Shown here: positions 12,045-57,845 of the stretch, piece by piece
Position numbering within the stretch: position 1 is the first letter of the stretch
Layout: each line of letters opens with the position of its first letter
Sequence record: NC_005083.2
Length of the DNA stretch: 64,000 bases
Strand: one strand, 5' to 3'
Made by a program: the position numbers and the translations under genes
The notes under the pieces: generated by a model
Database searches by the model: none
Seen by the model: the letters and a program-made list of their open reading frames with translations, nothing else
Told to the model about the DNA's origin: nothing

Positions 12045-13161
12045 TCAGATCATACGCTTTGATATGTGAGTAAAACTCTGGACACGCAGACGATAAATTA
12101 GTTTTCGTCTTCGTGTCTATTCTTTTGTTAAGAACAAAGAATTCAGGGTTGAATTTACAAACACTGTGTTCCAGAGTAAGACATTCAGCAACGTGCTTAA
12201 ATGGTCTAGCCAAATCCTCACGCCCATCTTTTAAATACGCTTCTTCTTTCACTTTGAATCTTGATAATAGCTGGTCTCGAAATGCAACTGGAATGTTGTA
12301 AATTGAGTATGGATTATCAGGCTCACCGACGACATGCACAGACAAACGTACACGTTTACCATCATAAAGCGAATCAAAATCTGAAACCAATGTTTCAAGA
12401 TGTTCAAGAGTCACGTTTGACACGGTCGCAGTGATAACTACATCAAAGTGTTGCTTGATGACTTCAATGTTTGATTTGACTTTTTTGATGTCTGCAAACA
12501 ATCGAATATAATCTTGGTATTCTCGTAGACCGTCGATTGATACGAACACCGTTGATGCATTAGCTTCTTTAAGCGATTTGATGAGATCTGAGCCATCGGC
12601 TAACACTAGTGATGAGCCATTCGTGAAAATATTCACTGCGGCTTTAATGTCGCCTACGTTGCGAAGAACTTCAGGAGCATTTGACGAGCGGGTAATTTCA
12701 CCGCCTAGAATTGTCAATGACGAAAGTCCTTTGCTGATTGTGTTGATTGTCGTACTCAAATCATTGAATCGAGTACTTGAATCTTCTTCATTGAACAATC
12801 TAGCCTTCAAGTCTGATAATTTGCTGTAGCAGTAACGACAAGCTTGATTACATTCATTACTAGGGAATACTTGTAGCCAGCGAACTGAATCAGCGGGCAT
12901 AATAGGTGAAACTTCAGAATCGTGTTCTGTTAGACGCTGTGGGTCATTATCAGTAATGCACATTTGACATGCCTTTGACAGCTTGCTCATGTCGTGGTTT
13001 AGCATTGCTTCACGATAAGCGACAAGCTTTTCATCATTCCAAGCGTCTGCTAGTGTTTTTTCATCAGTAAACCATTCATAATCAGCCGAACAGCAAAACG
13101 TAATTTGATTGTTTGCTCGTGTGATGAACTGCTTGAACGGCATATAACATAGTGGTTTCAT
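12037..13161 (-). CDS. radical SAM protein
   Basis: CNQACRYC, LGGE, FTNGS, SIDG; N-terminal C..CC..C..C. Confidence 0.85.
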   Translation of the reverse strand: MKPLCYMPFKQFITRANNQITFCCSADYEWFTDEKTLADAWNDEKLVAYREAMLNHDMSKLSKACQMCITDNDPQRLTEHDSEVSPIMPADSVRWLQVFPSNECNQACRYCYSKLSDLKARLFNEEDSSTRFNDLSTTINTISKGLSSLTILGGEITRSSNAPEVLRNVGDIKAAVNIFTNGSSLVLADGSDLIKSLKEANASTVFVSIDGLREYQDYIRLFADIKKVKSNIEVIKQHFDVVITATVSNVTLEHLETLVSDFDSLYDGKRVRLSVHVVGEPDNPYSIYNIPVAFRDQLLSRFKVKEEAYLKDGREDLARPFKHVAECLTLEHSVCKFNPEFFVLNKRIDTKTKTNLSSACPEFYSHIKAYDLIT

Positions 13162-43707: not shown

Positions 43708-44232
43708 CTATTTGCGCCCTTTACGATTTGCCTTATTTGCTTTTCTTTTTGCTCTACGCAACTCTTTGCGTTTTGCGATTTTGTCTGCACGTCTAACTGC
43801 ATCATAATCCGCAGCACACGACGCAGCAAACGCATCAGGCTTGAAAACGGGTTCTTGGCCCACGTATCCCAAGATAGTGCCCTTAGCTTCGTTATACGCA
43901 ACGTGTGAACGATGGGATGGGTCTGGGTTGATGTCAACGTGAACTTCAAACCCACGAGTACCACACATTGGCTTAACACGCAGAGCAGTTTCACCTGCTT
44001 TATAGACTTCATTCATCAAACGACTACGAATACCATCTTTACACGACATGTACGCTGGTTCAGTTTCGATAGATTTGAATACTTGAGCGCCTTTGCTACC
44101 CTCAAGGTGAATGATGATTACAGTAGCGTAACTAATCATATCACTCTTACGCTTGCTATCACACCCAACATAAATCGTACTGTTCGGATGACTGTTATTG
44201 ATAGCTGTTTCAATTGCTTCCCAATCGAACAT
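43708..44232 (-). CDS. RNase H-like protein (DUF458/YkuK family)
   Basis: IYVGCDS, RLMNEV, EVHVDIN, KPDAFAASCAAD. Confidence 0.8.
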   Translation of the reverse strand: MFDWEAIETAINNSHPNSTIYVGCDSKRKSDMISYATVIIIHLEGSKGAQVFKSIETEPAYMSCKDGIRSRLMNEVYKAGETALRVKPMCGTRGFEVHVDINPDPSHRSHVAYNEAKGTILGYVGQEPVFKPDAFAASCAADYDAVRRADKIAKRKELRRAKRKANKANRKGRK

Positions 44233-44282
44233 TTTCACCTCTGTACAAAAAAGGGCAGCACAATGCCGCCCTTATCACTTAT

Positions 44283-45719
44283 TTAAAAGCTGTAGCGTTC
44301 AACGCCTACAGTTTTCAGCATGATCTTGACTGGCTCAAGCTCACCACCCAACAGTGAAGTCAGGATAGATGGGCTACAACCCGATACCAGTGCAGTACCC
44401 GCTTCGCCAGCTTTAACCGGAACGTTGCCAAGACGACCACGAATGTTCCAGAAGACTAGTTGTGGCATTTCATAGCCAGCACGTGCGTACATAGCTTTGA
44501 TTGCGTCGAAGTTTGCACGTTCGCCACGACCGTACCAGCCACCACCAGTATTTGCTTGGTCGAATTCCATGTCGCTCATGATAAGCAACTTAGTCGGCAT
44601 TTCTTCTTGTGAAAGATTTGCACGTTTCGCACGTTCTAACAGAACGTTGAAGCACTTACCGATGTTTGTGCTCATGTCTTCGCCTGATCGATTCATGTTG
44701 TCAAGACGCTCTTTTAGTGAGCTACCGCGTAACTGGTGGAAGTGCGGATCGCTTGAGAACGAAATGAACTGATCTTTGAAGATGCCTTCATTGCGTTCAG
44801 CAACATAGATGCCAAGAGACATTGCAACTTGCTTACAAGTCACACCTGAACGATCTGCACCTGCGTTGATTGGCGTGCTCATAGAGCCAGACACGTCAAC
44901 AACTGGGATGATGCGCTCATCAGAGCCTTCCATGTAGTTCGGCAGGGCTTTCCATTGCTCGTTCGCTACAGACGCATTACCATGACTAACGCTCTTAACG
45001 ACATCATATGGGAACAAGGCACCAGCGTTGATCTTCGCTTCACCTTTTTGAAGCGACTCGATGTAGCTTGTGTAACGAACAGAAGCGTTACGACCGAATG
45101 CTTTTTGATAACGAGCAGACGCTACAGATGGCAACTTACCGAAGTCGATTGCATCCCATTCTTGCGCACACATCTTCTGTTCAACAGTGTCAGACAAAAG
45201 TGCTAGAATCTTACGCCACTGCTTCGCAGTTACACCAAGAGACTTGATTGTGCGCTTGAACACATGACCGTTTTTGCTGTTCTCGCGTGGGAACCACTTC
45301 GCAGCGAGACCGTTCTTGTCGTTTACAATCGCATTTGACCACAGTGTGATCGCGTCTTTTTCAAGTCTTGTGCCGAAAGCAGAAATCAAGTCGTCGAAGC
45401 GACCTAGTTCTGGAATTTTCGACATTACAGCACGAGCTACGTCAGGCTGCTCATTACAAAGCTTAGTGAATAGAGTACGGAAAGTACCACGTTCACCCGC
45501 ACCACCGCGAACATCACGAGACCACAAAAGAATGCGTGTCGCTAGTTCTGGGTTTTCTGCAAACGCACGACCGAACAGTGTTTTAGACTGATCGTTACCA
45601 CGCATAGCAGCAATACCGAAGAACAAGTTTAGACACTCGTTACCTGAAGTGCTGTGAGTAACTGCACCGTTTGCTGTACGTGAATCGTTTGATTGCATAG
45701 CGTTCATAAATGCTGACAT
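44283..45719 (-). CDS. DUF2828-family TROVE-like plus vWA protein (Ro60-like)
   Basis: RDVRGGAGER, GRFDDL, AAKWFPRE, VDVSGSM, SDMEFD, LVFWN. Confidence 0.85.
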   Translation of the reverse strand: MSAFMNAMQSNDSRTANGAVTHSTSGNECLNLFFGIAAMRGNDQSKTLFGRAFAENPELATRILLWSRDVRGGAGERGTFRTLFTKLCNEQPDVARAVMSKIPELGRFDDLISAFGTRLEKDAITLWSNAIVNDKNGLAAKWFPRENSKNGHVFKRTIKSLGVTAKQWRKILALLSDTVEQKMCAQEWDAIDFGKLPSVASARYQKAFGRNASVRYTSYIESLQKGEAKINAGALFPYDVVKSVSHGNASVANEQWKALPNYMEGSDERIIPVVDVSGSMSTPINAGADRSGVTCKQVAMSLGIYVAERNEGIFKDQFISFSSDPHFHQLRGSSLKERLDNMNRSGEDMSTNIGKCFNVLLERAKRANLSQEEMPTKLLIMSDMEFDQANTGGGWYGRGERANFDAIKAMYARAGYEMPQLVFWNIRGRLGNVPVKAGEAGTALVSGCSPSILTSLLGGELEPVKIMLKTVGVERYSF

Positions 45720-45754
45720 TGTTTATTCCTCATATTAAATTGCTGTAAAATGTC
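45715..45754 (-). promoter_or_regulatory. CAGCAA-motif hairpin sequestering RBS and start codon
   Basis: gacatt-tta-cagcaa...gagga...aATGtc on minus strand. Confidence 0.7.
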
Positions 45755-48817: not shown

Positions 48818-48878
48818 GATTTATCATGCGCTATAAACAAAAAAACCTGCTCAAGGCAGGTTCTAATGTGCAATACAC

Positions 48879-49125
48879 AGACATTCGAGAATTGTTTTAT
48901 CGTCTTTCCTTAAATCTCAATTGACTATCTCGATGTTTCTCATCAAGAGAATACCCATGATTCGGCATGAGACCTATTTCGTTTAACAGTACGAACACCG
49001 TCTTAATGGTCATTTCCTACCACGAGAATGCGACAGGCTCACGTCATCACTGAGAAAGCAGCTAGTGCGCCTCATTACTATTAAAGTTTGCTTCTTTGAT
49101 TAGTAATAGTTGCTGTACAATGTCT
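48879..49125 (-). ncRNA. CAGCAA-motif structured RNA (~250 nt)
   Basis: agacatt/aatgtct closing stem; gta-cagcaa; attacta/tagtaat. Confidence 0.6.
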
Positions 49126-49136
49126 TATTGCGAATT

Positions 49137-49225
49137 TGGCGGAGATACTGGGAATCGAACCCAGAGAACGCTATTAACGTCCGACACCTTAGCAGGGTGC
49201 TGTCATACCTTTAGACCATATCTCC
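49137..49225 (-). tRNA. tRNA-Ser(GCT)
   Basis: cloverleaf, long variable arm, CCA. Confidence 0.92.
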
Positions 49226-49230
49226 GTAGA

Positions 49231-49410
49231 TCATTTCTTACCACGCTCTGCTTTGCTAATCTCGACAGCAGCGATTTGCGCGTTGGCTTCTTTCTCAGTG
49301 TCATGAGTACCAAGTACTCGACCTTTAGATGAAAGAGCAACCCATTTGTCGCCACGCTTCTCGACTTTCTCAACAAGCTTGTGATATTCATCAAATGTTT
49401 TAAGTTTCAT
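49231..49410 (-). CDS. 59-aa putative internal head protein (not in ORF track)
   Basis: TATAAATA ~49436; gaggg RBS; MKLKTFDEYHKLVE..GDKW..LGTHDTEKEANAQIAAVEISK. Confidence 0.75.
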   Translation of the reverse strand: MKLKTFDEYHKLVEKVEKRGDKWVALSSKGRVLGTHDTEKEANAQIAAVEISKAERGKK

Positions 49411-49665
49411 GTGTCATCCCTCAGTTAGTTTATTGTATTTATAACTGAACGACTTTTAAACAGTGGCATGCTGCTCCCATGCTCAGACACATATTTGCTC
49501 TTAATGCAGGCGTGTGCCACGCGCAGCGCAGATCCCATTCGATAATTTAATGACCAGCGGGACTCTTAGCAGGTCTACACATAGCCTTTCAGCTATATCT
49601 TCTTTTAAGACCATAGTGTCGTACGGTCTAATCACTCTCTTTCGATTCGCGTTGCTAAGTGAATT

Positions 49666-49742
49666 TGGTGCCCAACCCGAGATTCGAACTCGGATCATCT
49701 AGTGTTTGAAACTAGCGCCTCTGCCAATTGGACTAGTTGGGC
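49666..49742 (-). tRNA. tRNA-Leu(CAA), short variable loop
   Basis: ctagt-ttCAAac-actag, ACCA. Confidence 0.9.
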
Positions 49743-49858
49743 TTGAATAAGCTGCCGCAACTCTTTAATCCCTAACGCCTGTCAGCTTTCGCTCGGCTGA
49801 GACCGTTTTTCAACGGCGGTAGTCTAGCTTCGTGTAGAACGCGGCTTATGCTAGAGTT

Positions 49859-49935
49859 TGGTACGCACGGGCGGATTCGAACCGCCATCCCTGAGATTTT
49901 AAGCCTCATGCCTCTGCCAATTGGACCACGTGCGC
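49859..49935 (-). tRNA. tRNA-Leu(TAA), short variable loop
   Basis: tgagg-ctTAAaa-tctca. Confidence 0.9.
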
Positions 49936-49937
49936 AG

Positions 49938-50011
49938 TGGAGCCCGAACAGAGAATCGAACTCTGACCGCGGGATTTGCAATCCCTCATACTTCCATTAT
50001 ACGATTCGGGC
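49938..50011 (-). tRNA. tRNA-Cys(GCA)
   Basis: ttGCAaa loop, TCCA. Confidence 0.9.
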
Positions 50012-50114
50012 AATTTGTTAGTGCATTGCATGGACTACTGGCGATCTTAATGGGTATCTCAAGCATTCAGAATTCCCATGCGCTACTACAATGCTTTTTT
50101 CGCTAAATGCACTT

Positions 50115-50192
50115 TGGGGTGACAGACGGGGATCGAACCCGCATCTTCCGGAATCACAACCCGGGGGTATTTCCACTTCACCCACTGCCACA
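50115..50192 (-). tRNA. tRNA-His(GTG)
   Basis: ccggg-ttGTGat-tccgg, CCCA. Confidence 0.88.
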
Positions 50193-50245
50193 CCAAAGTA
50201 CACTTTGGGATGTTTACGACATCAAACGAATGCGCTCCCTGTGCA

Positions 50246-50485
50246 TTAATCAGTTTTCTTTAAGTAGATACTATCAGGCGATAGCTCTCTCGTAAACATA
50301 TTTTTGAAATAAATTTCGATGTCATCAGAAGTTGTTGAAGACTCAATTTCAAGAGCACGTTCTAAAATCTTACCGCGTTTATAACCAGCGCGCCAACAGT
50401 CAAACATAAGTCTGTCCATGCGTTTCAGTTTTTCAATTTGGTTTTGATTTACGTATTCGTGAGTTTCAAGTAATACAGGCGTCAT
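50246..50485 (-). CDS. hypothetical protein
   Basis: gaga RBS, between tRNAs. Confidence 0.5.
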   Translation of the reverse strand: MTPVLLETHEYVNQNQIEKLKRMDRLMFDCWRAGYKRGKILERALEIESSTTSDDIEIYFKNMFTRELSPDSIYLKKTD

Positions 50486-50508
50486 AATTTATTTCTCATC
50501 ATAAAGAA

Positions 50509-50582
50509 TGGTAGTCCCTAGTGGAATCGAGCCACTTCTTTCTCTGTGTAAAAGAGACGTACTGCCATTATACTAAGGGACC
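50509..50582 (-). tRNA. tRNA-Val(TAC)
   Basis: tctct-ttTACac-agaga. Confidence 0.9.
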
Positions 50583-50587
50583 AAAAT

Positions 50588-50661
50588 TGGAGCGGGTACA
50601 CGGACTCGAACCGAGACGAACGACTTGGAAGGACGTCATGCTACCATTACATCATACCCGC
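50588..50661 (-). tRNA. tRNA-Gly(TCC)
   Basis: ctTCCaa loop. Confidence 0.9.
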
Positions 50662-50848
50662 ATTGTTAATCTGAAGCGTCGAACAAATCACGTATTGCAC
50701 GCAGATTCGTAAGCTCTACAGTAAGTGTTCTTATAAAGAACGGGTTGGTCTCTTTCGCGAGACGATTTTCAACACAGCGAATCTTATCGCGTATGTTGCC
50801 CTTGCTTAGTGTAAAGTAGTCATGCTTCTTATCCTCTTTGCTTGAATT

Positions 50849-50924
50849 TGGTGGAGACACCGATACTCGAAATCGGATCTAATGGCTTATGAGACCATTG
50901 CTCTACCACTTGAGCTACATCTCC
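50849..50924 (-). tRNA. tRNA-Met/Ile2(CAT)
   Basis: atggt-ctCATaa-gccat. Confidence 0.88.
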
Positions 50925-51154
50925 AAAATCAGTAATTAACTCATTTAATCGCACACGGGCTGACACCATATATTCATGGTCTGAGCGAGGAACCACATAG
51001 TGGGTACTATTACCTCATCTTAGTTTTGATTGTTTTACATGACGATAACTAGAAACGTTCATAATAATGCCACGCGATACTTCCTGTATCACGGCTAACT
51101 GAGTTAGCATATCGTGCCTTGCGGCTGTAGTGTCGTTTCCGACGAATTAAGTAC

Positions 51155-51367
51155 AGACAATACCGAAGTGTTTTTTCGTCTTTGACATGAATCGGAGTTG
51201 ACTATCTTGTTATTCACAACAAGCAAATATCGTCTGTTTCAGCGACGCGCCTATCTGACTATTTCTAGACAGAGAGAATCTTTCCTTTCAAGCTGCACCG
51301 AAGCACCGCCCAGGTTAAGATCATTACCATTTTAAGTAAGATTTTAATTTGTTGCTGTATATTGTCT
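51155..51367 (-). ncRNA. CAGCAA-motif structured RNA (~210 nt)
   Basis: agacaat/attgtct closing stem; ata-cagcaa. Confidence 0.6.
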
Positions 51368-51428
51368 CTCAAACCATGCTCGTGATATGCCGAAGCAAGT
51401 ATCATTCGGCGCATGATAGAGCTTAATT

Positions 51429-51504
51429 TGGCATCCCCAGAGGGATTCGAACCCACAACCCACGACTTAGAAGGTCGTTGCTCTTCCAATTGAGCTATGA
51501 GGAC
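51429..51504 (-). tRNA. tRNA-Arg(TCT)
   Basis: acgac-ctTCTaa-gtcgt. Confidence 0.92.
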
Positions 51505-51580
51505 GTTGAAAGTATTCGATCCATGAGCTATTGCGCAGACGATGGTAGTAAAGAGACTCTGCACTCATGTGATCGAAATT

Positions 51581-51655
51581 TGGTGGACACGCAGGGAGTC
51601 GAACCCTATCTTCCTCATTGCAAGTGAGGCGCTTTCCCAATTAAGCTAACGGCCC
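51581..51655 (-). tRNA. tRNA-Ala(TGC)
   Basis: cctca-ctTGCaa-tgagg. Confidence 0.9.
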
Positions 51656-51666
51656 AATGTTCGTTT

Positions 51667-51876
51667 TTACAACTGTGTGATTGAGATATGATCCCAGCCG
51701 TATAAACCTTCAAGTTCTTCAATAGGCTCACAAACAATGTCAGAAATATATTCAGCAACTTTTGCTTCAATTTCTTCATCAGATAGCTTTTCATCAATTG
51801 CAAAAGCATCTTCATTATTGTTGCCACCGAAATAGCCACCAATGTCATATTCACACCATACTGAAATATAGTTCAT
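51667..51876 (-). CDS. acidic hypothetical protein
   Basis: gaga RBS before ATG 51876. Confidence 0.55.
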   Translation of the reverse strand: MNYISVWCEYDIGGYFGGNNNEDAFAIDEKLSDEEIEAKVAEYISDIVCEPIEELEGLYGWDHISITQL

Positions 51877-51900
51877 GTTATTCTCACAGTTGTTTGAAAA

Positions 51901-51976
51901 TGGTGCCCTGACACGGATTTGAACCGCGAACCTGCTCATTACAAGTGAGCTGCACTGCCAATTGTGCTATCAGGGC
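51901..51976 (-). tRNA. tRNA-Thr(TGT)
   Basis: gctca-ctTGTaa-tgagc. Confidence 0.92.
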
Positions 51977-51982
51977 GTTACT

Positions 51983-52095
51983 GAGTGTTATTACTTGCGT
52001 CGTCCAGACCAGAGATACCAACTCTGAAAGGGAATCGAACCCCAAACATTTCTTTTCGTAAGAAGAATATTAGTAATTGTTTGCTGAAAACACTC
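51983..52095 (-). ncRNA. CAGCAA-motif RNA enclosing a T-arm
   Basis: gagtgtt/aacactc; tt-cagcaa; attact/agtaat; gggTTCGAttccc. Confidence 0.65.
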
Positions 52096-52104
52096 TTCGG
52101 TATT

Positions 52105-52178
52105 TGGCAGGGGATAACGGATTCGAACCGGTACTGCGTGAGTCAAAGTCACGTATGCTGCCTTTACATCAATCCCCT
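52105..52178 (-). tRNA. tRNA-Gln(TTG)
   Basis: cgtga-ctTTGac-tcacg. Confidence 0.92.
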
Positions 52179-52197
52179 ATTATTCTTAAATTATCTT

Positions 52198-52273
52198 TGG
52201 CGGAACCGACGGGTTTCGAACCCGCTACCTTCTCCGTGACAGGGAGACATGCAACCACTTACACCTCGGCTCC
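52198..52273 (-). tRNA. tRNA-Asp(GTC)
   Basis: tctcc-ctGTCac-ggaga. Confidence 0.92.
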
Positions 52274-52495
52274 CCAAAGACAACTTAACGTTGCTTTGTG
52301 CTCGTGCAAACCAAACACTAGCTGAACGACTTCTTGATTTCTTAGTTGTACTACACATTCCCTCGCTAAAGGGCGTCATCGTTCTTGTTTTTAACAAATG
52401 CTATGAAAGTGAGATCTTGCTATGCAGGAGGTTTCAAATCTCTGCACACAAGCAGACATCGCAACCAACGCTCTCAAACATTGTCATGGTCAAAC

Positions 52496-52571
52496 TGGCG
52501 CCTTATGTTGGACTCGAACCAACGACTCTCTGGTTAACAGCCAGACACTCTACCGACTGAGTTAATAAGGC
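52496..52571 (-). tRNA. tRNA-Asn(GTT)
   Basis: tctgg-ctGTTaa-ccaga. Confidence 0.92.
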
Positions 52572-52577
52572 AAAATA

Positions 52578-52652
52578 TGGCGGGCGTGGAGAATTTCGAA
52601 ATCTCGACCTGACGGTTAACAGCCGTCTGCTCTGCCTCTGAGCTACACACCC
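52578..52652 (-). tRNA. tRNA-Asn(GTT), second copy
   Basis: gacgg-ctGTTaa-ccgtc. Confidence 0.92.
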
Positions 52653-52664
52653 TTTAAATTAAAC

Positions 52665-52722
52665 AGCAATCCTTTTCTCTTTTTCCAAATAAAAGTTTTG
52701 TATTGTTTGCTGAAAGATTGCT
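52665..52722 (-). ncRNA. short CAGCAA-motif RNA
   Basis: agcaatc/gattgct; ttt-cagcaa. Confidence 0.6.
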
Positions 52723-53153: not shown

Positions 53154-53252
53154 TGGCGGAAGACTAGGGATTCGAACCCTAACATCACCTCCCGGTGACC
53201 GACGGTTTTCAAGACCGTTGCCGCTACCCAGAATCTTTCGGCTAAGCCTTCC
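53154..53252 (-). tRNA. tRNA-Ser(TGA)
   Basis: acggt-ctTGAaa-accgt, long variable arm. Confidence 0.88.
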
Positions 53253-53259
53253 ATTAATT

Positions 53260-53334
53260 TGGTAGCGAGTGCCAGAATCGAACTGACCTAAACTAGCTTA
53301 TGAGACTAGTGAGTTCACCAGAACTCTAACTCGC
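53260..53334 (-). tRNA. tRNA-Met(CAT)
   Basis: ctagt-ctCATaa-gctag. Confidence 0.85.
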
Positions 53335-53437
53335 AATTATTCAACAGCTTGCGTTCTTTGGTCTGTTTATCGCTGTCTGAACTGAGTTCGCCGAGCGATC
53401 AATAGATTAAGTTGAATTGCAGTATGCAAGCTAAATT

Positions 53438-53989: not shown

Positions 53990-54024
53990 ATTGTTTGTTT
54001 TTGAACGTTACTTCGTTCTTCTTC

Positions 54025-54146
54025 ATTGTACATGATGTTTATATCGTTGTAAACATCTTTTTTGAAAAACTTTTCATTAACTTTTGAATGATATTTCGCT
54101 TTTCTCTATTGTACATGATGTTTATATCGTTGTAAACATCTTTTTA
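54025..54146 (-). promoter_or_regulatory. duplicated 39-bp early-type promoter
   Basis: identical repeats 54025..54063 and 54108..54146; GTTTAC(A)..TACAAT on minus strand. Confidence 0.8.
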
Positions 54147-54300
54147 AATTTATTTTGAAGAACTTAACGTTTTCATTTTTCTATGTGTTAATCTTAACAC
54201 TCGCTCAAGACATCTTAAACACTAATTTGTGAAAAAGTTCGTTAAATTCTATCATCACGACAGTACTTAACGAGATACGGTCCTAAGCGTATCAAATTAA

Positions 54301-54428
54301 TTCAGAATGGTGAGACTTGAACTCACTTCGAGTAATAGCGTAAACTAACAGTTGTTGCCAGAGGCTATCAATTATTCTCTACCGAGTATGTTGCAACTCT
54401 GCATTTCCCCATTTCTAGGCATTCTGAA
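54301..54428 (-). ncRNA. tRNA-like RNA with large anticodon-position insert
   Basis: cagaatg/cattctg acceptor; gtgagTTCAAgtctcac T arm; no 7-nt anticodon loop. Confidence 0.6.
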
Positions 54429-54431
54429 ATA

Positions 54432-55300: not shown

Positions 55301-55416
55301 TGGTAGTCGGGGCTGGATTCGAACCAGCGACCACGTGCTTAACAGGCAATTGAAGGAGTGCTGGAGCGATACTTGTCAGTATCATTCTTCGTGCTCTACC
55401 ACTGAGCTACCCGACT
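55301..55416 (-). ncRNA. tRNA-mimic RNA (GACA hairpin, CAGCAC)
   Basis: acceptor, D arm, T arm, ACCA; gatact-GACA-agtatc-gctc-CAGCAC. Confidence 0.8.
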
Positions 55417-56966: not shown

Positions 56967-57090
56967 TGGTGGAGAGTGATGGATTTGAACCACCGACCAA
57001 AAGATTTACCTAGTTATTAAGGTTTGCAGCATGAATGCTTGTCAGTATTCTTTAACATTCTTTTGCTCTACCAGACTGAGCTAACTCTCC
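56967..57090 (-). ncRNA. tRNA-mimic RNA (GACA hairpin, CTGCAA)
   Basis: ggagagt/actctcc-ACCA; gaatact-GACA-agcattc-atg-CTGCAA. Confidence 0.8.
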
Positions 57091-57096
57091 ATAATT

Positions 57097-57214
57097 TGAG
57101 GGTGAAGTACAGGACTCGAACCTGCGACCTCCGGCGTGCATGTAAATGCAGAATGAAATCTTATCAGACTTCGTTTTTTGAGCCGGCATTCTAACCAACT
57201 GAACTAACTTCACC
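57097..57214 (-). ncRNA. tRNA-mimic RNA on an Asp-like shell (GATA hairpin, CTGCAT)
   Basis: ggtgaag/cttcacc; ccggc/gccgg; gaagtct-GATA-agatttc-att-CTGCAT. Confidence 0.8.
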
Positions 57215-57529: not shown

Positions 57530-57718
57530 CTAATCACAACACAACCCAATATCGTGCGCTTTAATTACGGGATTGATGACCCGTTCGCATGTGATTAGCG
57601 TAAAAGTATGATTACGCACCTTTTCTTCTTCAATGTCCAAGGCAAAGAGGACTATGAATACCAGTGCGAGAAGATATACAATCAAATTGCTCACCTCGCT
57701 TAATAAGTGAGAGTACAT
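57530..57718 (-). CDS. small membrane protein
   Basis: hydrophobic LIVYLLALVFIVLFAL. Confidence 0.45.
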   Translation of the reverse strand: MYSHLLSEVSNLIVYLLALVFIVLFALDIEEEKVRNHTFTLITCERVINPVIKAHDIGLCCD

Positions 57719-57845
57719 TGGTCGAGTGTAACGGAATCGAACCGTTCCCACGATCTCCCTATGATATGCGTAAATTGGTTGCTGAATATAATCATGTCTG
57801 ATTACAGTATGCTACGTGTGCTGCCACTACACCAACACTCGACCA
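57719..57845 (-). ncRNA. tRNA-mimic RNA (GACA hairpin, CAGCAA), paralog of 57327
   Basis: taatca-GACA-tgatta-tatt-CAGCAA; aacggTTCGAttccgtt. Confidence 0.8.

What the first reader, a model, noticed from the sequence alone, without database searches (positions are those of the whole stretch)
48879..52722. Four free-standing CAGCAA RNAs of 58-250 nt interleaved with tRNAs
Seen: 48879..49125, 51155..51367, 51983..52095 and 52665..52722 each start with a 7-bp closing helix (agacatt/aatgtct, agacaat/attgtct, gagtgtt/aacactc, agcaatc/gattgct) followed after 2-3 nt by CAGCAA. Two continue with an attact/agtaat helix. The 51983 copy encloses a T-loop hairpin (gggTTCGAttccc), a permuted topology like YrlA. 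Inference: one protein-binding handle attached to different RNA cargo domains.
Basis: partly seen in the sequence, partly recalled or inferred. Interest (0 to 1): 0.8.

Follow-up and report, generated by a model that had tools for sequence, protein, structure and literature searches.

The report
Shared-handle RNAs in phage tRNA cluster
Vibrio phage KVP40 hides at least five unannotated small RNAs among its tRNA genes that all carry the same stem-plus-CAGCAA 'handle'; the same handle sits beside a Ro60-like (DUF2828) gene in many unrelated phages and closely resembles the orphan Class I RNAs of Dictyostelium, which points to a widespread RNA-protein particle I could not find described.

Summary
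The window is Vibrio phage KVP40 (record 124001-188000). The four elements exist exactly as described, on the minus strand, in unannotated gaps of the tRNA cluster.

- **More copies.** I found a fifth free-standing copy (53346-53432, CUGCAA variant). A 40-nt mini-copy covers the Shine-Dalgarno sequence and AUG of the DUF2828 gene. Hairpin-capped copies sit inside four over-long tRNA-like genes.
- **Same handle elsewhere.** The handle is an A-U and G-C closed 7-bp stem, 2-3 nt, C(A/U)GCAA, and a G after the 3' arm. It recurs on the gene's strand beside DUF2828 genes in metagenomic viral contigs, in bacterial and archaeal MAG contigs, and in cultured Escherichia, Listeria, Campylobacter and Mycobacterium phages. 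The stems covary freely.
- **Controls.** The T4 and T5 tRNA regions show no convincing handle, and the stretches examined hold no DUF2828.
- **Protein.** The DUF2828 model matches full-length Ro60 structures.
- **Best reading.** These are Y-RNA-like partner RNAs of a Ro60-like protein, with variable cargo that is partly tRNA-like, plus an autoregulatory operator. Binding is inferred, not shown.
- **Known families.** No Rfam family covers the handle. The only resemblance, below threshold, is to Dictyostelium Class I RNA, which shares the same architecture.

The parts
48879..49125 (-). Handle RNA A (247 nt): AGACAUU-gua-CAGCAA ... AAUGUCU-GU. It is the last RNA of the tRNA cluster. It is a paralog of B and shares B's 3' module.
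   Evidence: Orthologs of 149-271 nt occur in nt-1, 6E35.1a, 1.081.O and ValKK3. F86 has the CUGCAA variant.
48842..48864 (-). Intrinsic terminator-like hairpin with a T-run, directly after A.
51155..51367 (-). Handle RNA B (213 nt): AGACAAU-aua-CAGCAA ... AUUGUCU-GU.
   Evidence: In F86 the stem changes on both sides (AGGCAAU/AUUGCCU).
51983..52095 (-). Handle RNA C (113 nt): GAGUGUU-uu-CAGCAA, then a hairpin, a T-arm (GGGUUCGAUUCCC) and a D-arm-like hairpin (CAGAG-UUGGUAU-CUCUG), closed by AACACUC. It lies between tRNA-Gln and tRNA-Thr in all relatives examined.
   Evidence: Both the T-arm and the D-arm-like stem covary.
52665..52722 (-). Handle RNA D (58 nt), the minimal form: (A)AGCAAUC-uuu-CAGCAA ... 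GAUUGCU-GU.
   Evidence: Stem changes on both sides in relatives: AGUAAUC/GAUUACU, and AGAAUGU/GCAUUCU in 1.081.O. Model R1 scores it 51.8 bits, but it was in the training set. Rfam Dicty_Class_I gives 27.4 bits over the full length.
53346..53432 (-). Handle RNA E (87 nt), not in the finding: AGCUUGC-aua-CUGCAA ... GCAAGCU-GU. It lies between tRNA-Tyr and tRNA-Met.
   Evidence: R1 hit of 19.3 bits, E 0.02; conserved in nt-1, ValKK3, VS1, phi-Grn1 and TCU-VP03.
45715..45754 (-). Mini-handle in the DUF2828 leader: GACAUU-uua-CAGCAA-uuuaauauGAGGAAuaaac-AAUGUC. The loop holds the Shine-Dalgarno sequence and the 3' arm holds the AUG. Proposed translational operator.
   Evidence: (R1 15.4 bits, E 0.22). 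Conserved in 6E35.1a, VS1, 1.081.O, TCU-VP03 and VH7D. Analogous hairpins lie just before the Shine-Dalgarno sequence in distant loci L035, L044, L058, L059 and L040.
44283..45719 (-). KVP40.0300, a 478-aa DUF2828 protein (PF11443 + PF25043). It has a Ro60-like fold and is the proposed binding partner.
55304..55416 (-). Over-long tRNA-like gene ('tRNA-Pseudo-3'). Its anticodon region holds a 7-bp hairpin with a GACA loop, then cuc-CAGCAC, which reads as a hairpin-capped handle variant.
56970..57090 (-). Over-long tRNA-like gene ('tRNA-Pseudo-4') with a 49-nt insert that contains ...CAUUC-aug-CUGCAA.
57101..57213 (-). Over-long tRNA-like gene ('tRNA-Pseudo-5') with the insert GAAGUCU-gaua-AGAUUUC-auu-CUGCAU.
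57718..57842 (-). Fourth over-long tRNA-like gene, unannotated in KVP40. Its insert reads UGUAAUC-agacau-GAUUAUA-uu-CAGCAA. Annotated as tRNA-OTHER in phi-Grn1.

Best explanation
The elements are a family of small non-coding RNAs co-transcribed with the phage tRNAs. I infer they are released by tRNA-end processing, because they abut tRNAs.

**The handle.** All share a terminal handle: a 7-bp stem whose outer pairs are A-U (or U-A) and an invariant G-C, a 2-3 nt linker with a conserved U, single-stranded C(A/U)GCAA, and an unpaired G after the 3' arm. I propose that this handle is the docking site for the phage's Ro60-like DUF2828 protein (KVP40.0300). The RNAs would then play the part that Y RNAs play for Ro60.

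**The cargo.** The variable interior would recruit or mimic other partners:
- nothing in D;
- a T-arm plus D-arm elbow in C;
- a shared 3' module in A and B;
- a whole tRNA body in the over-long tRNA-like genes.

**The operator.** The copy of the handle that wraps the Shine-Dalgarno sequence and AUG of the DUF2828 mRNA would let the protein repress its own translation once free RNA partners are saturated.

**Shown versus inferred.** Shown here: the RNA family, its covariation, its genetic linkage and strand bias, and the Ro60-like fold. Inferred: transcription as discrete RNAs, binding by DUF2828, and autoregulation.

**Downstream role.** It is unknown. Its neighbours are tRNA, tmRNA and RNA-ligase genes, and a preprint reports that a Ro60-like protein encoded upstream of the tRNA genes in a Felixounavirus counters the Ppl defence system. 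Both point to RNA quality control or counter-defence.
For: 1. **Observation and local conservation.**
2. **Covariation.** In 52 short handles, 6 of 7 stem pairs change on both sides (112 cells). 98% of cells are paired, against 28-50% when the partner is slid.
3. **Forward linkage.** In 80 IMG/VR loci chosen only for DUF2828, pattern hits number 163 on the gene strand, 63 on the opposite strand and 32-50 in shuffles. Density is 8.6 per 10 kb in the 800 nt after the stop, against about 0.5 background. 47 of 80 loci have a handle within 800 nt of the gene. Model R1 finds 93 hits, all on the gene strand.
4. **Independent set.** In 80 bacterial and archaeal MAG loci, 36 of 37 hits are on the gene strand. 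Most lie within about 700 nt of the gene, and up to four stand in tandem.
5. **Cultured phages from four host phyla.** Handles directly flank the gene in Escherichia phage humlepung, Listeria LP-125, Campylobacter PC14 and Mycobacterium LeBron.
6. **Reverse test.** Of 66 motif-anchored loci, 19 hold DUF2828 within the few kb available, all 19 on the same strand.
7. **Negative controls.** The T4 and T5 tRNA regions show no convincing handle, and no DUF2828 lies in the stretches examined.
8. **Leader copies.** A handle lies over or beside the DUF2828 ribosome-binding site in KVP40 relatives and in loci only about 50% identical.
9. **Neighbours.** None of the seven other KVP40 genes tested (six neighbours and 57B) is found in more than 2 of the 160 other loci.
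10. **Fold.** The only full-length PDB matches to the DUF2828 model are Ro60 proteins: 9l5y, 1yvr and 2i91, with E from 5e-7 to 5e-6 and TM 0.45-0.57.
11. **Prior work.** Bas63 gp130 is Ro60-like, lies upstream of the tRNA genes and counters Ppl. The authors suspected unidentified Y RNAs (preprint 10.1101/2024.10.10.617714).
Against: - No expression or end-mapping data were available, and no binding data exist.
- The handle stems are weak on their own (-3 to -10 kcal/mol).
- Most motif-anchored handles sit in tRNA arrays, a median of 8 nt from a tRNA. 47 of 66 have no DUF2828 in the DNA held, so linkage to tRNA arrays is at least as tight as linkage to the gene. Whole-genome co-occurrence was not measured.
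- Some DUF2828 loci show no handle within 10 kb, for example Aeh1 (L065), and most Lachnospiraceae loci show none within the 5 kb examined.
- The handle bears no resemblance to the known Ro60-binding helix of Y RNAs, and no YrlA or Y_RNA model matches A-E.
- The 52 training sequences were chosen for pairing, so the percentage paired is partly circular. The strand bias, the position bias and the independent sets are not.
Confidence: 0.7

Rival explanations
1. The handle belongs to tRNA-array biology, not to DUF2828. It would be a spacer or punctuation RNA recognised by tRNA-processing or tRNA-repair enzymes (RNase P, E or Z, 5'-end repair, ligases), or by another phage factor. The link to DUF2828 would arise only because that gene also tends to sit next to tRNA arrays.
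For: - Motif-anchored handles lie a median of 8 nt from a tRNA or tmRNA. 43 of 66 have one within 300 nt, always on the same strand.
- The 7-bp terminal stem has the length of an acceptor stem.
- In Dictyostelium a Thg1-like 5'-end repair enzyme acts on Class I RNAs (PMC5041481).
- RtcB-like and RNA ligase genes lie near the locus in Listeria phage LP-125.
Against: - In LeBron the handles lie next to DUF2828 with no tRNA annotated in the 11-kb stretch examined. tRNA content of the cyanophage-like loci L013-L030 was not checked.
- Copies of the handle sit over the DUF2828 ribosome-binding site.
- The large tRNA arrays of T4 and T5 have no convincing handles.
Confidence: 0.17
2. The handles are purely cis-acting mRNA or DNA elements: stabilisers or terminators in the 3' UTR, leaders, or promoter-like DNA sites of the DUF2828 operon and the tRNA operon. 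They would not be free-standing RNAs.
For: - Many copies lie directly after the DUF2828 stop codon or in its leader.
- One sigma-70-like match (GAGACA-16-TAAAAT, 9 of 12) overlaps the handle of B.
Against: - The stem covaries while the single-stranded motif is fixed, which is an RNA-level constraint.
- No T-run follows the 3' arm.
- Copies occur in tandem arrays, between tRNAs kilobases from the gene, and enclose structured cargo up to 270 nt.
- Promoter-like matches in the region are only modestly above the shuffled expectation (32 against 20.3 +/- 4.5).
Confidence: 0.07
3. The elements are remnants of small mobile elements or homing-endonuclease debris, and the 7-bp inverted repeats are terminal repeats.
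For: - There are several copies with inverted ends in a region where relatives carry HNH or homing endonuclease insertions.
Against: - Orthologs sit between the same tRNAs in genomes whose element sequence is only about 75% identical to KVP40's.
- The repeats change on both sides in place.
- The motif is strictly strand-specific relative to transcription.
- The same architecture is seen across host phyla.
Confidence: 0.03

Closest known systems
Ro60 with Y RNA / YrlA ribonucleoproteins, including phage versions (mycobacteriophages, Thermus phage phiLo; PMC4201824, PMC12135203)
   Same: - A ring-type HEAT plus vWA protein, with the Ro60 fold as top match.
- The protein gene lies next to, and on the same strand as, one or several small RNAs.
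- Those RNAs pair their 5' and 3' ends in a stem and carry a variable, partly tRNA-like second module.
- Neighbours include RNA-repair genes.
   Different: - The protein belongs to Pfam DUF2828 (PF11443 + PF25043), not TROVE. Sequence search finds no Ro60.
- The RNA handle is a short stem plus single-stranded CAGCAA. It is not the bulged Ro-binding helix or the GNCGAA motif.
- Rfam YrlA and Y_RNA models do not match A-E.
- Many copies are embedded in tRNA arrays.
Dictyostelium Class I RNAs (Rfam RF01414; PMC7919456)
   Same: The architecture matches point for point:
- length about 55-62 nt for the minimal form;
- a terminal 6-7 bp stem whose structure, not sequence, is conserved;
- an invariant 5' G paired to a C;
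- a preceding A and a following U-G(U) tail (AAG...CUGU);
- a conserved single-stranded (U)UACAGCAA directly after the 5' arm;
- an A-rich variable interior and low GC.

This is the only non-tRNA Rfam family to align over the full length of a handle.
   Different: - Scores of 27-28 bits are below the gathering score of 41.5.
- The linker is 1 nt shorter.
- The phage RNAs sit in polycistronic tRNA or DUF2828 contexts, whereas Class I RNAs are single genes with a DUSE promoter.
- The phage family includes long-cargo forms.
- The known Dictyostelium binder is the RRM protein Rnp1A.
- I could not test whether Dictyostelium has a DUF2828 protein.
Stable RNAs of unknown function in the T4 tRNA cluster (rnaC, rnaD) and the T5 tRNA cluster (RNAI, RNAIII, RNA1, RNA2, RNA3, RNAIV, RNA2H, RNAX)
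   Same: - Small stable RNAs interleaved with phage tRNAs.
- Some are tRNA-like.
- T4 rnaC and rnaD occupy the same syntenic position, at the 3' end of the cluster, as KVP40 element A.
   Different: - They have no stem-CAGCAA handle, and model R1 finds nothing.
- No DUF2828 gene lies in the T4 and T5 stretches examined.
Translational operators that mimic a protein's RNA ligand (T4 RegA, gp32 and gp43; ribosomal-protein operators; the MS2 coat-protein hairpin). From established knowledge.
   Same: A copy of the presumed RNA ligand overlaps the Shine-Dalgarno sequence and AUG of the protein's own mRNA.
   Different: Here the operator role is inferred from sequence only.

Membership tests
Dictyostelium Class I RNA (RF01414) | Short terminal stem that joins the 5' and 3' ends, conserved in structure but not in sequence | tested here: met
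Dictyostelium Class I RNA (RF01414) | Conserved 11-nt motif (Rfam consensus CCUUACAGCAA) directly after the 5' arm | tested here: inconclusive
   CAGCAA is invariant in the model's training set, and U(U)A often precedes it. The linker is one base shorter, and the first two C are not conserved.
Dictyostelium Class I RNA (RF01414) | Length 42-65 nt | tested here: inconclusive
   D is 58 nt, and most short phage handles are 50-63 nt. A, B, C and E are 87-247 nt.
Dictyostelium Class I RNA (RF01414) | Mature ends AAG... and ...CUGU, with the G paired to the C | not testable with these tools
   The DNA reads AAG...CUGU in A and D, with variants (GAG or UAG before the stem) in B and E. The G-C pair and the following G are invariant in 52 sequences. 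The RNA ends are unmapped.
Dictyostelium Class I RNA (RF01414) | Score at or above the Rfam gathering threshold (41.5 bits) | tested here: not met
   27.4 bits for D and 28.2 bits for L014. No hit at the gathering threshold in 7 loci rich in handles.
Dictyostelium Class I RNA (RF01414) | Independent gene with a DUSE promoter element about 60 nt upstream | not tested
   The phage copies abut tRNAs or the DUF2828 ORF, so the transcription context is clearly different.
Y RNA / YrlA (RF00019, RF02553) | Encoded close to a Ro60-type gene and on the same strand | tested here: met
   Met for the Ro60-like DUF2828 gene.
Y RNA / YrlA (RF00019, RF02553) | Ro60-binding helix or motif, as captured by the Rfam models | tested here: not met
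   No Y_RNA or YrlA match on A-E even at E up to 5. The only YrlA hit (29.8 bits, gathering score 69) spans two adjacent tRNA-like genes.
Y RNA / YrlA (RF00019, RF02553) | tRNA-like module (T and D arms) | tested here: inconclusive
   Present and covarying in C. The over-long tRNA-like genes carry the motif. No tRNA-like module was recognised in A, B, D or E.
Y RNA / YrlA (RF00019, RF02553) | Physical association with the Ro60-type protein | not testable with these tools
   Needs RIP, CLIP or EMSA.
Ro60 / TROVE proteins (for KVP40.0300) | HEAT-repeat ring followed by a vWA domain | tested here: met
   AlphaFold2 model with pLDDT 77 and pTM 0.73. Full-length Foldseek matches are Ro60 proteins only.
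Ro60 / TROVE proteins (for KVP40.0300) | Sequence-level membership (TROVE Pfam domain or a detectable match to Ro60) | tested here: not met
   Pfam gives PF11443 + PF25043. phmmer against PDB finds no Ro60. NCBIfam gives no hit.
T4 rnaC/rnaD and T5 stable RNAs | Sequence or structure similarity to those RNAs | tested here: not met
   Only the genomic setting is shared.

The most novel reading that the evidence does not exclude
Dictyostelid Class I RNAs, so far described as unique to social amoebae and of unknown mechanism, may belong to the same RNA class as these phage handle RNAs. In that case their conserved stem plus UACAGCAA would be the docking site of a DUF2828 / Ro60-like protein. The class would be an ancient or horizontally spread ribonucleoprotein shared by phages of many bacterial phyla and a bacterivorous eukaryote.
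Probability: 0.3. Interest if true: 0.92.

Novelty: new variant of a known kind. Interest (0 to 1): 0.85.

Why it matters
- **A missing partner for a common protein.** DUF2828 has thousands of detected homologs in the protein database and occurs in 710 cultured-phage records. These include Felix O1-like, Listeria P100-like, Campylobacter and cluster L mycobacteriophages. No RNA partner has been reported for it in the literature I could search.
- **A link to counter-defence.** A preprint reports that a Ro60-like protein of Felixounavirus Bas63, which I take to be the DUF2828 homolog (not checked directly), counters the Ppl defence system. Its authors could only guess that Y RNAs hide among the tRNAs.
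- **A concrete, searchable RNA.** The handle gives candidates in E. coli K-12 phages. It also explains unannotated gaps and 'pseudo-tRNAs' in phage tRNA clusters, and predicts an autoregulatory operator.
- **A testable idea for Dictyostelium.** The match to Class I RNAs offers a direct hypothesis for a 20-year-old orphan RNA class.

Tried and rejected
- **Folding energy.** Single-sequence folding energies are not significant.
- **Rfam.** At gathering thresholds only tRNAs and tmRNAs match. In E-value mode there is no YrlA or Y_RNA match on A-E.
- **T4 and T5 RNAs.** T4 rnaC/rnaD and the T5 stable RNAs share the setting but not the handle.
- **Coding.** The ORFs over the elements are short or run through tRNAs. 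Ortholog lengths differ by numbers that are not multiples of three.
- **Promoter or MotA-box reading.** Only one 9-of-12 sigma-70-like match overlaps an element, at B.
- **Other neighbours as partner.** KVP40.0299 (PF04308), 0301-0304, 0310 and 57B are each found in at most 2 of the 160 other DUF2828 loci.
- **Sequence searches with DUF2828.** NCBIfam gives nothing. PDB gives only weak armadillo-repeat matches.
- **Literature.** I found no paper linking DUF2828 to an RNA. Avesson 2011, which lists four Class I RNA-binding proteins, is not held.
- **Dictyostelium DUF2828.** I could not determine whether Dictyostelium encodes DUF2828, because no named eukaryotic search was possible.
- **Other motif variants in the window.** CAGCAT, CAGCAC, CCGCAA and others gave only doubtful candidates, for example 50962-51134.

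Full report
**Identity and setting**

The window is Vibrio phage KVP40 (NC_005083.2), record positions 124001-188000, in the same orientation. The finding lies in the tRNA cluster. All tRNAs are on the minus strand: ARAGORN finds 28, and Rfam adds one more tRNA plus three over-long tRNA-like genes. The four elements lie in gaps with no annotated feature. The synteny matches T4: dNMP kinase, 57A, 57B, tRNAs, then small stable RNAs at the 3' end.

**Checking the observation**

Read on the minus strand, the elements are:
- A: AGACAUU-gua-CAGCAA...AAUGUCU
- B: AGACAAU-aua-CAGCAA...AUUGUCU
- C: GAGUGUU-uu-CAGCAA...AACACUC
- D: AGCAAUC-uuu-CAGCAA...GAUUGCU

All are exact. Between 48 and 58 kb the sense strand holds five CAGCAA, and four have such a helix. 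Shuffles of the whole strand give 1.5 hits under a laxer rule. A is followed by an intrinsic terminator. Folding energies alone do not stand out.

**More copies in the window**

- I built a covariance model (R1) from short handles found elsewhere. In the window it finds D, a new element E (53346-53432, AGCUUGC-aua-CUGCAA...GCAAGCU, E 0.02), the DUF2828 leader, and the 5' part of C. E is conserved in five relatives.
- The leader of KVP40.0300 reads GACAUU-uua-CAGCAA-uuuaauauGAGGAAuaaac-AAUGUC. The Shine-Dalgarno sequence lies in the loop and the AUG in the 3' arm. This is conserved in relatives that share about 77-97% protein identity.
- Four over-long tRNA-like genes (three annotated as pseudo-tRNAs and one unannotated at 57718-57842) carry an insert in the anticodon region. 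In three of them it reads: a 7-bp hairpin with a 4-6 nt loop (GACA, GAUA or AGACAU), 2-3 nt, then C(A/U)GCA(A/U/C). Pseudo-4 has a shorter stem with a longer loop before aug-CUGCAA. In effect the handle's open ends are capped by a loop and the tRNA body becomes the cargo.

**Close relatives**

Relatives examined were nt-1, 6E35.1a, F86, 1.081.O, ValKK3, VS1, phi-Grn1 and TCU-VP03.
- A, B, C and D keep their places between the same tRNAs, while the interior length varies (A: 149-271 nt).
- Stems change on both sides. D is AGCAAUC/GAUUGCU in KVP40, AGUAAUC/GAUUACU in several relatives and AGAAUGU/GCAUUCU in 1.081.O. B is AGGCAAU/AUUGCCU in F86.
- F86 uses CUGCAA in its A-, B- and D-type copies.
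- A and B are paralogs. They share a 3' module whose inner helix covaries (GAGA/UCUC against CCGA/UCGG).
- C holds a T-arm and, two bases later, a D-arm-like hairpin. Both covary and both keep conserved loops (GUUCGAWUC and UUGGUAU).

**The protein**

KVP40.0300 (478 aa) is PF11443 + PF25043 and falls in PHROG 850 'RNA-binding protein'. It has thousands of homologs. Sequence searches find no Ro60. An AlphaFold2 model built from a 30-sequence alignment (pLDDT 77, pTM 0.73) matches Ro60 structures over its full length, and matches nothing else beyond the vWA domain. The Ro60 matches are Thermus phage phiLo 9l5y and Xenopus 1yvr and 2i91.

**Linkage tests**

1. *Loci fetched only by DUF2828 similarity (80 IMG/VR loci, 46-55% identity).* A simple stem-plus-CAGCAA scan gives 163 hits on the gene strand, 63 on the other strand and 32-50 in shuffles. 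Hits concentrate in the 800 nt after the stop codon: 8.6 per 10 kb against about 0.5 background. 47 of 80 loci have a handle within 800 nt. Several loci carry a 30-36 nt handle hairpin just before the Shine-Dalgarno sequence of the gene.
2. *Alignment of 52 short handles.* The invariant positions are the 5' G, a linker U, CAGCAA, the C that pairs with the G, and the G after the stem. Six of seven pairs covary. One caveat applies: these sequences were selected for pairing.
3. *Model R1 on 88 phage loci.* It gives 93 hits at E <= 0.1, all on the gene strand.
4. *Independent set of 80 bacterial and archaeal MAG loci.* 36 of 37 hits are on the gene strand. Most lie within 700 nt of the gene, and up to four stand in tandem.
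5. *Cultured phages.* 710 phage records encode the protein. Handles flank the gene in each of these:
   - Escherichia phage humlepung, a Felixounavirus: four copies at the head of its tRNA array.
   - Listeria LP-125: three tandem copies upstream of the gene.
   - Campylobacter PC14: two copies upstream.
   - Mycobacterium LeBron: three copies filling the gap downstream.
6. *Reverse test.* A handle-only DNA pattern retrieved loci in which 74 of 88 matches also pair at the two unconstrained stem positions. 19 of 66 loci hold DUF2828 in the few kb available, all on the same strand. 43 of 66 have a tRNA or tmRNA within 300 nt on the same strand, with a median gap of 8 nt.
7. *Controls.* The tRNA regions of T4 and T5 have no convincing handle, and no DUF2828 lies in the stretches examined.
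8. *Other KVP40 genes.* None of the seven other KVP40 genes tested is found in more than 2 of the 160 other loci.

**Comparison with known families**

- No Rfam family reaches threshold on any handle.
- The one full-length resemblance is Dictyostelium Class I RNA (RF01414): 27.4 bits on D and 28.2 bits on L014, against a gathering score of 41.5.
- The published description of Class I RNAs reads as follows: 42-65 nt, a 6-bp terminal stem conserved in structure only, an 11-nt motif after the 5' arm, an AAG start, and a CUGU end with C pairing the invariant 5' G. They are reported as unique to Dictyostelia (PMC7919456). This fits the phage consensus closely.
- A Thg1-like 5'-end repair enzyme acts on Class I RNAs (PMC5041481).
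- Phage Ro60 with Y-like RNAs is known for TROVE-type proteins (PMC4201824, PMC12135203), but with a different RNA motif.
- A preprint reports that Bas63 gp130 is Ro60-like, lies upstream of the tRNA genes and counters the Ppl defence. Its authors speculate that some tRNA genes are Y RNAs.
- I found no paper that links DUF2828 to a defined RNA.

**Interpretation**

Shown here:
- a widespread, strand-specific, covarying RNA handle;
- its genetic linkage to a Ro60-fold protein;
- its embedding in tRNA arrays.

Inferred:
- the RNAs are released from tRNA polycistrons;
- DUF2828 binds the handle;
- the leader copy is an autoregulatory operator;
- the variable interiors adapt the particle to different partners.

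The main rival is that the handle serves tRNA-array processing or repair independently of DUF2828. The tight spacing to tRNAs favours that rival. The gene-adjacent copies in a locus with no annotated tRNA (LeBron), the leader copies, and the T4 and T5 controls disfavour it.

**Limits**

- No expression data were available.
- Whole-genome co-occurrence was not measured.
- Some DUF2828 loci lack detectable handles in the flanks examined: Aeh1 within 10 kb, and most Lachnospiraceae loci within 5 kb.
- The Dictyostelium link rests on architecture and a sub-threshold score.

Noticed in passing
window 55304-55416, 56970-57090, 57101-57213, 57718-57842 (minus strand): Four tRNA-like genes of 113-125 nt have intact acceptor, D and T arms but a 45-50 nt insert in place of the anticodon loop. 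In three of them the insert holds a 7-bp hairpin with a GACA, GAUA or AGACAU loop, followed by 2-3 nt and C(A/U)GCA(A/U/C); the fourth (56970-57090) has a shorter stem and a longer loop. The fourth gene listed (57718-57842) is unannotated in KVP40, and the GTG start of ORF KVP40.0319 overlaps it.
   Followed up: partly
window 52578-52652, 53154-53239, 53260-53335, 51584-51655: ARAGORN and/or Rfam call tRNAs here (second Asn, Ser-UGA, Met). They are missing from the KVP40 RefSeq feature table or listed only as pseudo (tRNA-Pseudo-1 at 51584-51655).
   Followed up: no
window 50925-51154 and 50962-51134 (minus strand): About 230 nt of unannotated sequence lies downstream of B. It includes a doubtful degenerate handle (GACACUA-cag-CCGCAA...UGGUGUC). 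Other unexplained non-coding gaps are 49412-49665, 52274-52495 and 53990-54431.
   Followed up: no
window 51667-51939 (minus strand): A 90-aa ATG ORF lies between tRNA-Pseudo-1 and tRNA-Thr. It is not annotated in KVP40. Relatives annotate a small CDS at the equivalent place.
   Followed up: no
window 43708-44238 (minus strand): KVP40.0299, directly downstream of DUF2828, is annotated with PF04308 (RNase H-like). The pairing is kept in close relatives and in 1.081.O but not in distant DUF2828 loci (2 of 160).
   Followed up: partly
L041 8605-9054, L050 16119-16481, L067 16534-16891: Phage-encoded tmRNA genes lie within a few kb of DUF2828, tRNAs and handle RNAs in three metagenomic viral contigs.
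   Followed up: no
L041 12394-12654: A pattern-defined handle whose closing stem encloses a complete tRNA (Rfam hit at 12545-12616), so a whole tRNA may be the cargo. L041 and L043 each carry seven handles.
   Followed up: no
L292 (Listeria phage LP-125) 7855-9066 and 10626-11506: RtcB-like tRNA-splicing ligase and RNA ligase genes lie 1-4 kb downstream of DUF2828 and its three tandem handles. This is an RNA-repair neighbourhood like that of bacterial rsr-yrlA-rtcBA.
   Followed up: no
L072 1652-3687: The DUF2828 match spans 2036 nt for 478 query residues, so the gene seems to carry an insertion of about 200 codons (intein, intron or extra domain).
   Followed up: no
short handles in L014, L018-L025 (e.g. 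L018 9921-9978): Many short handles repeat AGCAA two more times in the interior (CAGCAA...AAGCAA...UAGCAA). This hints at more than one binding unit per RNA.
   Followed up: no
L085 2982-3017: A sub-threshold match to the DUF805b RNA motif (30.1 bits, gathering score 35.6) lies 90 nt downstream of a handle.
   Followed up: no
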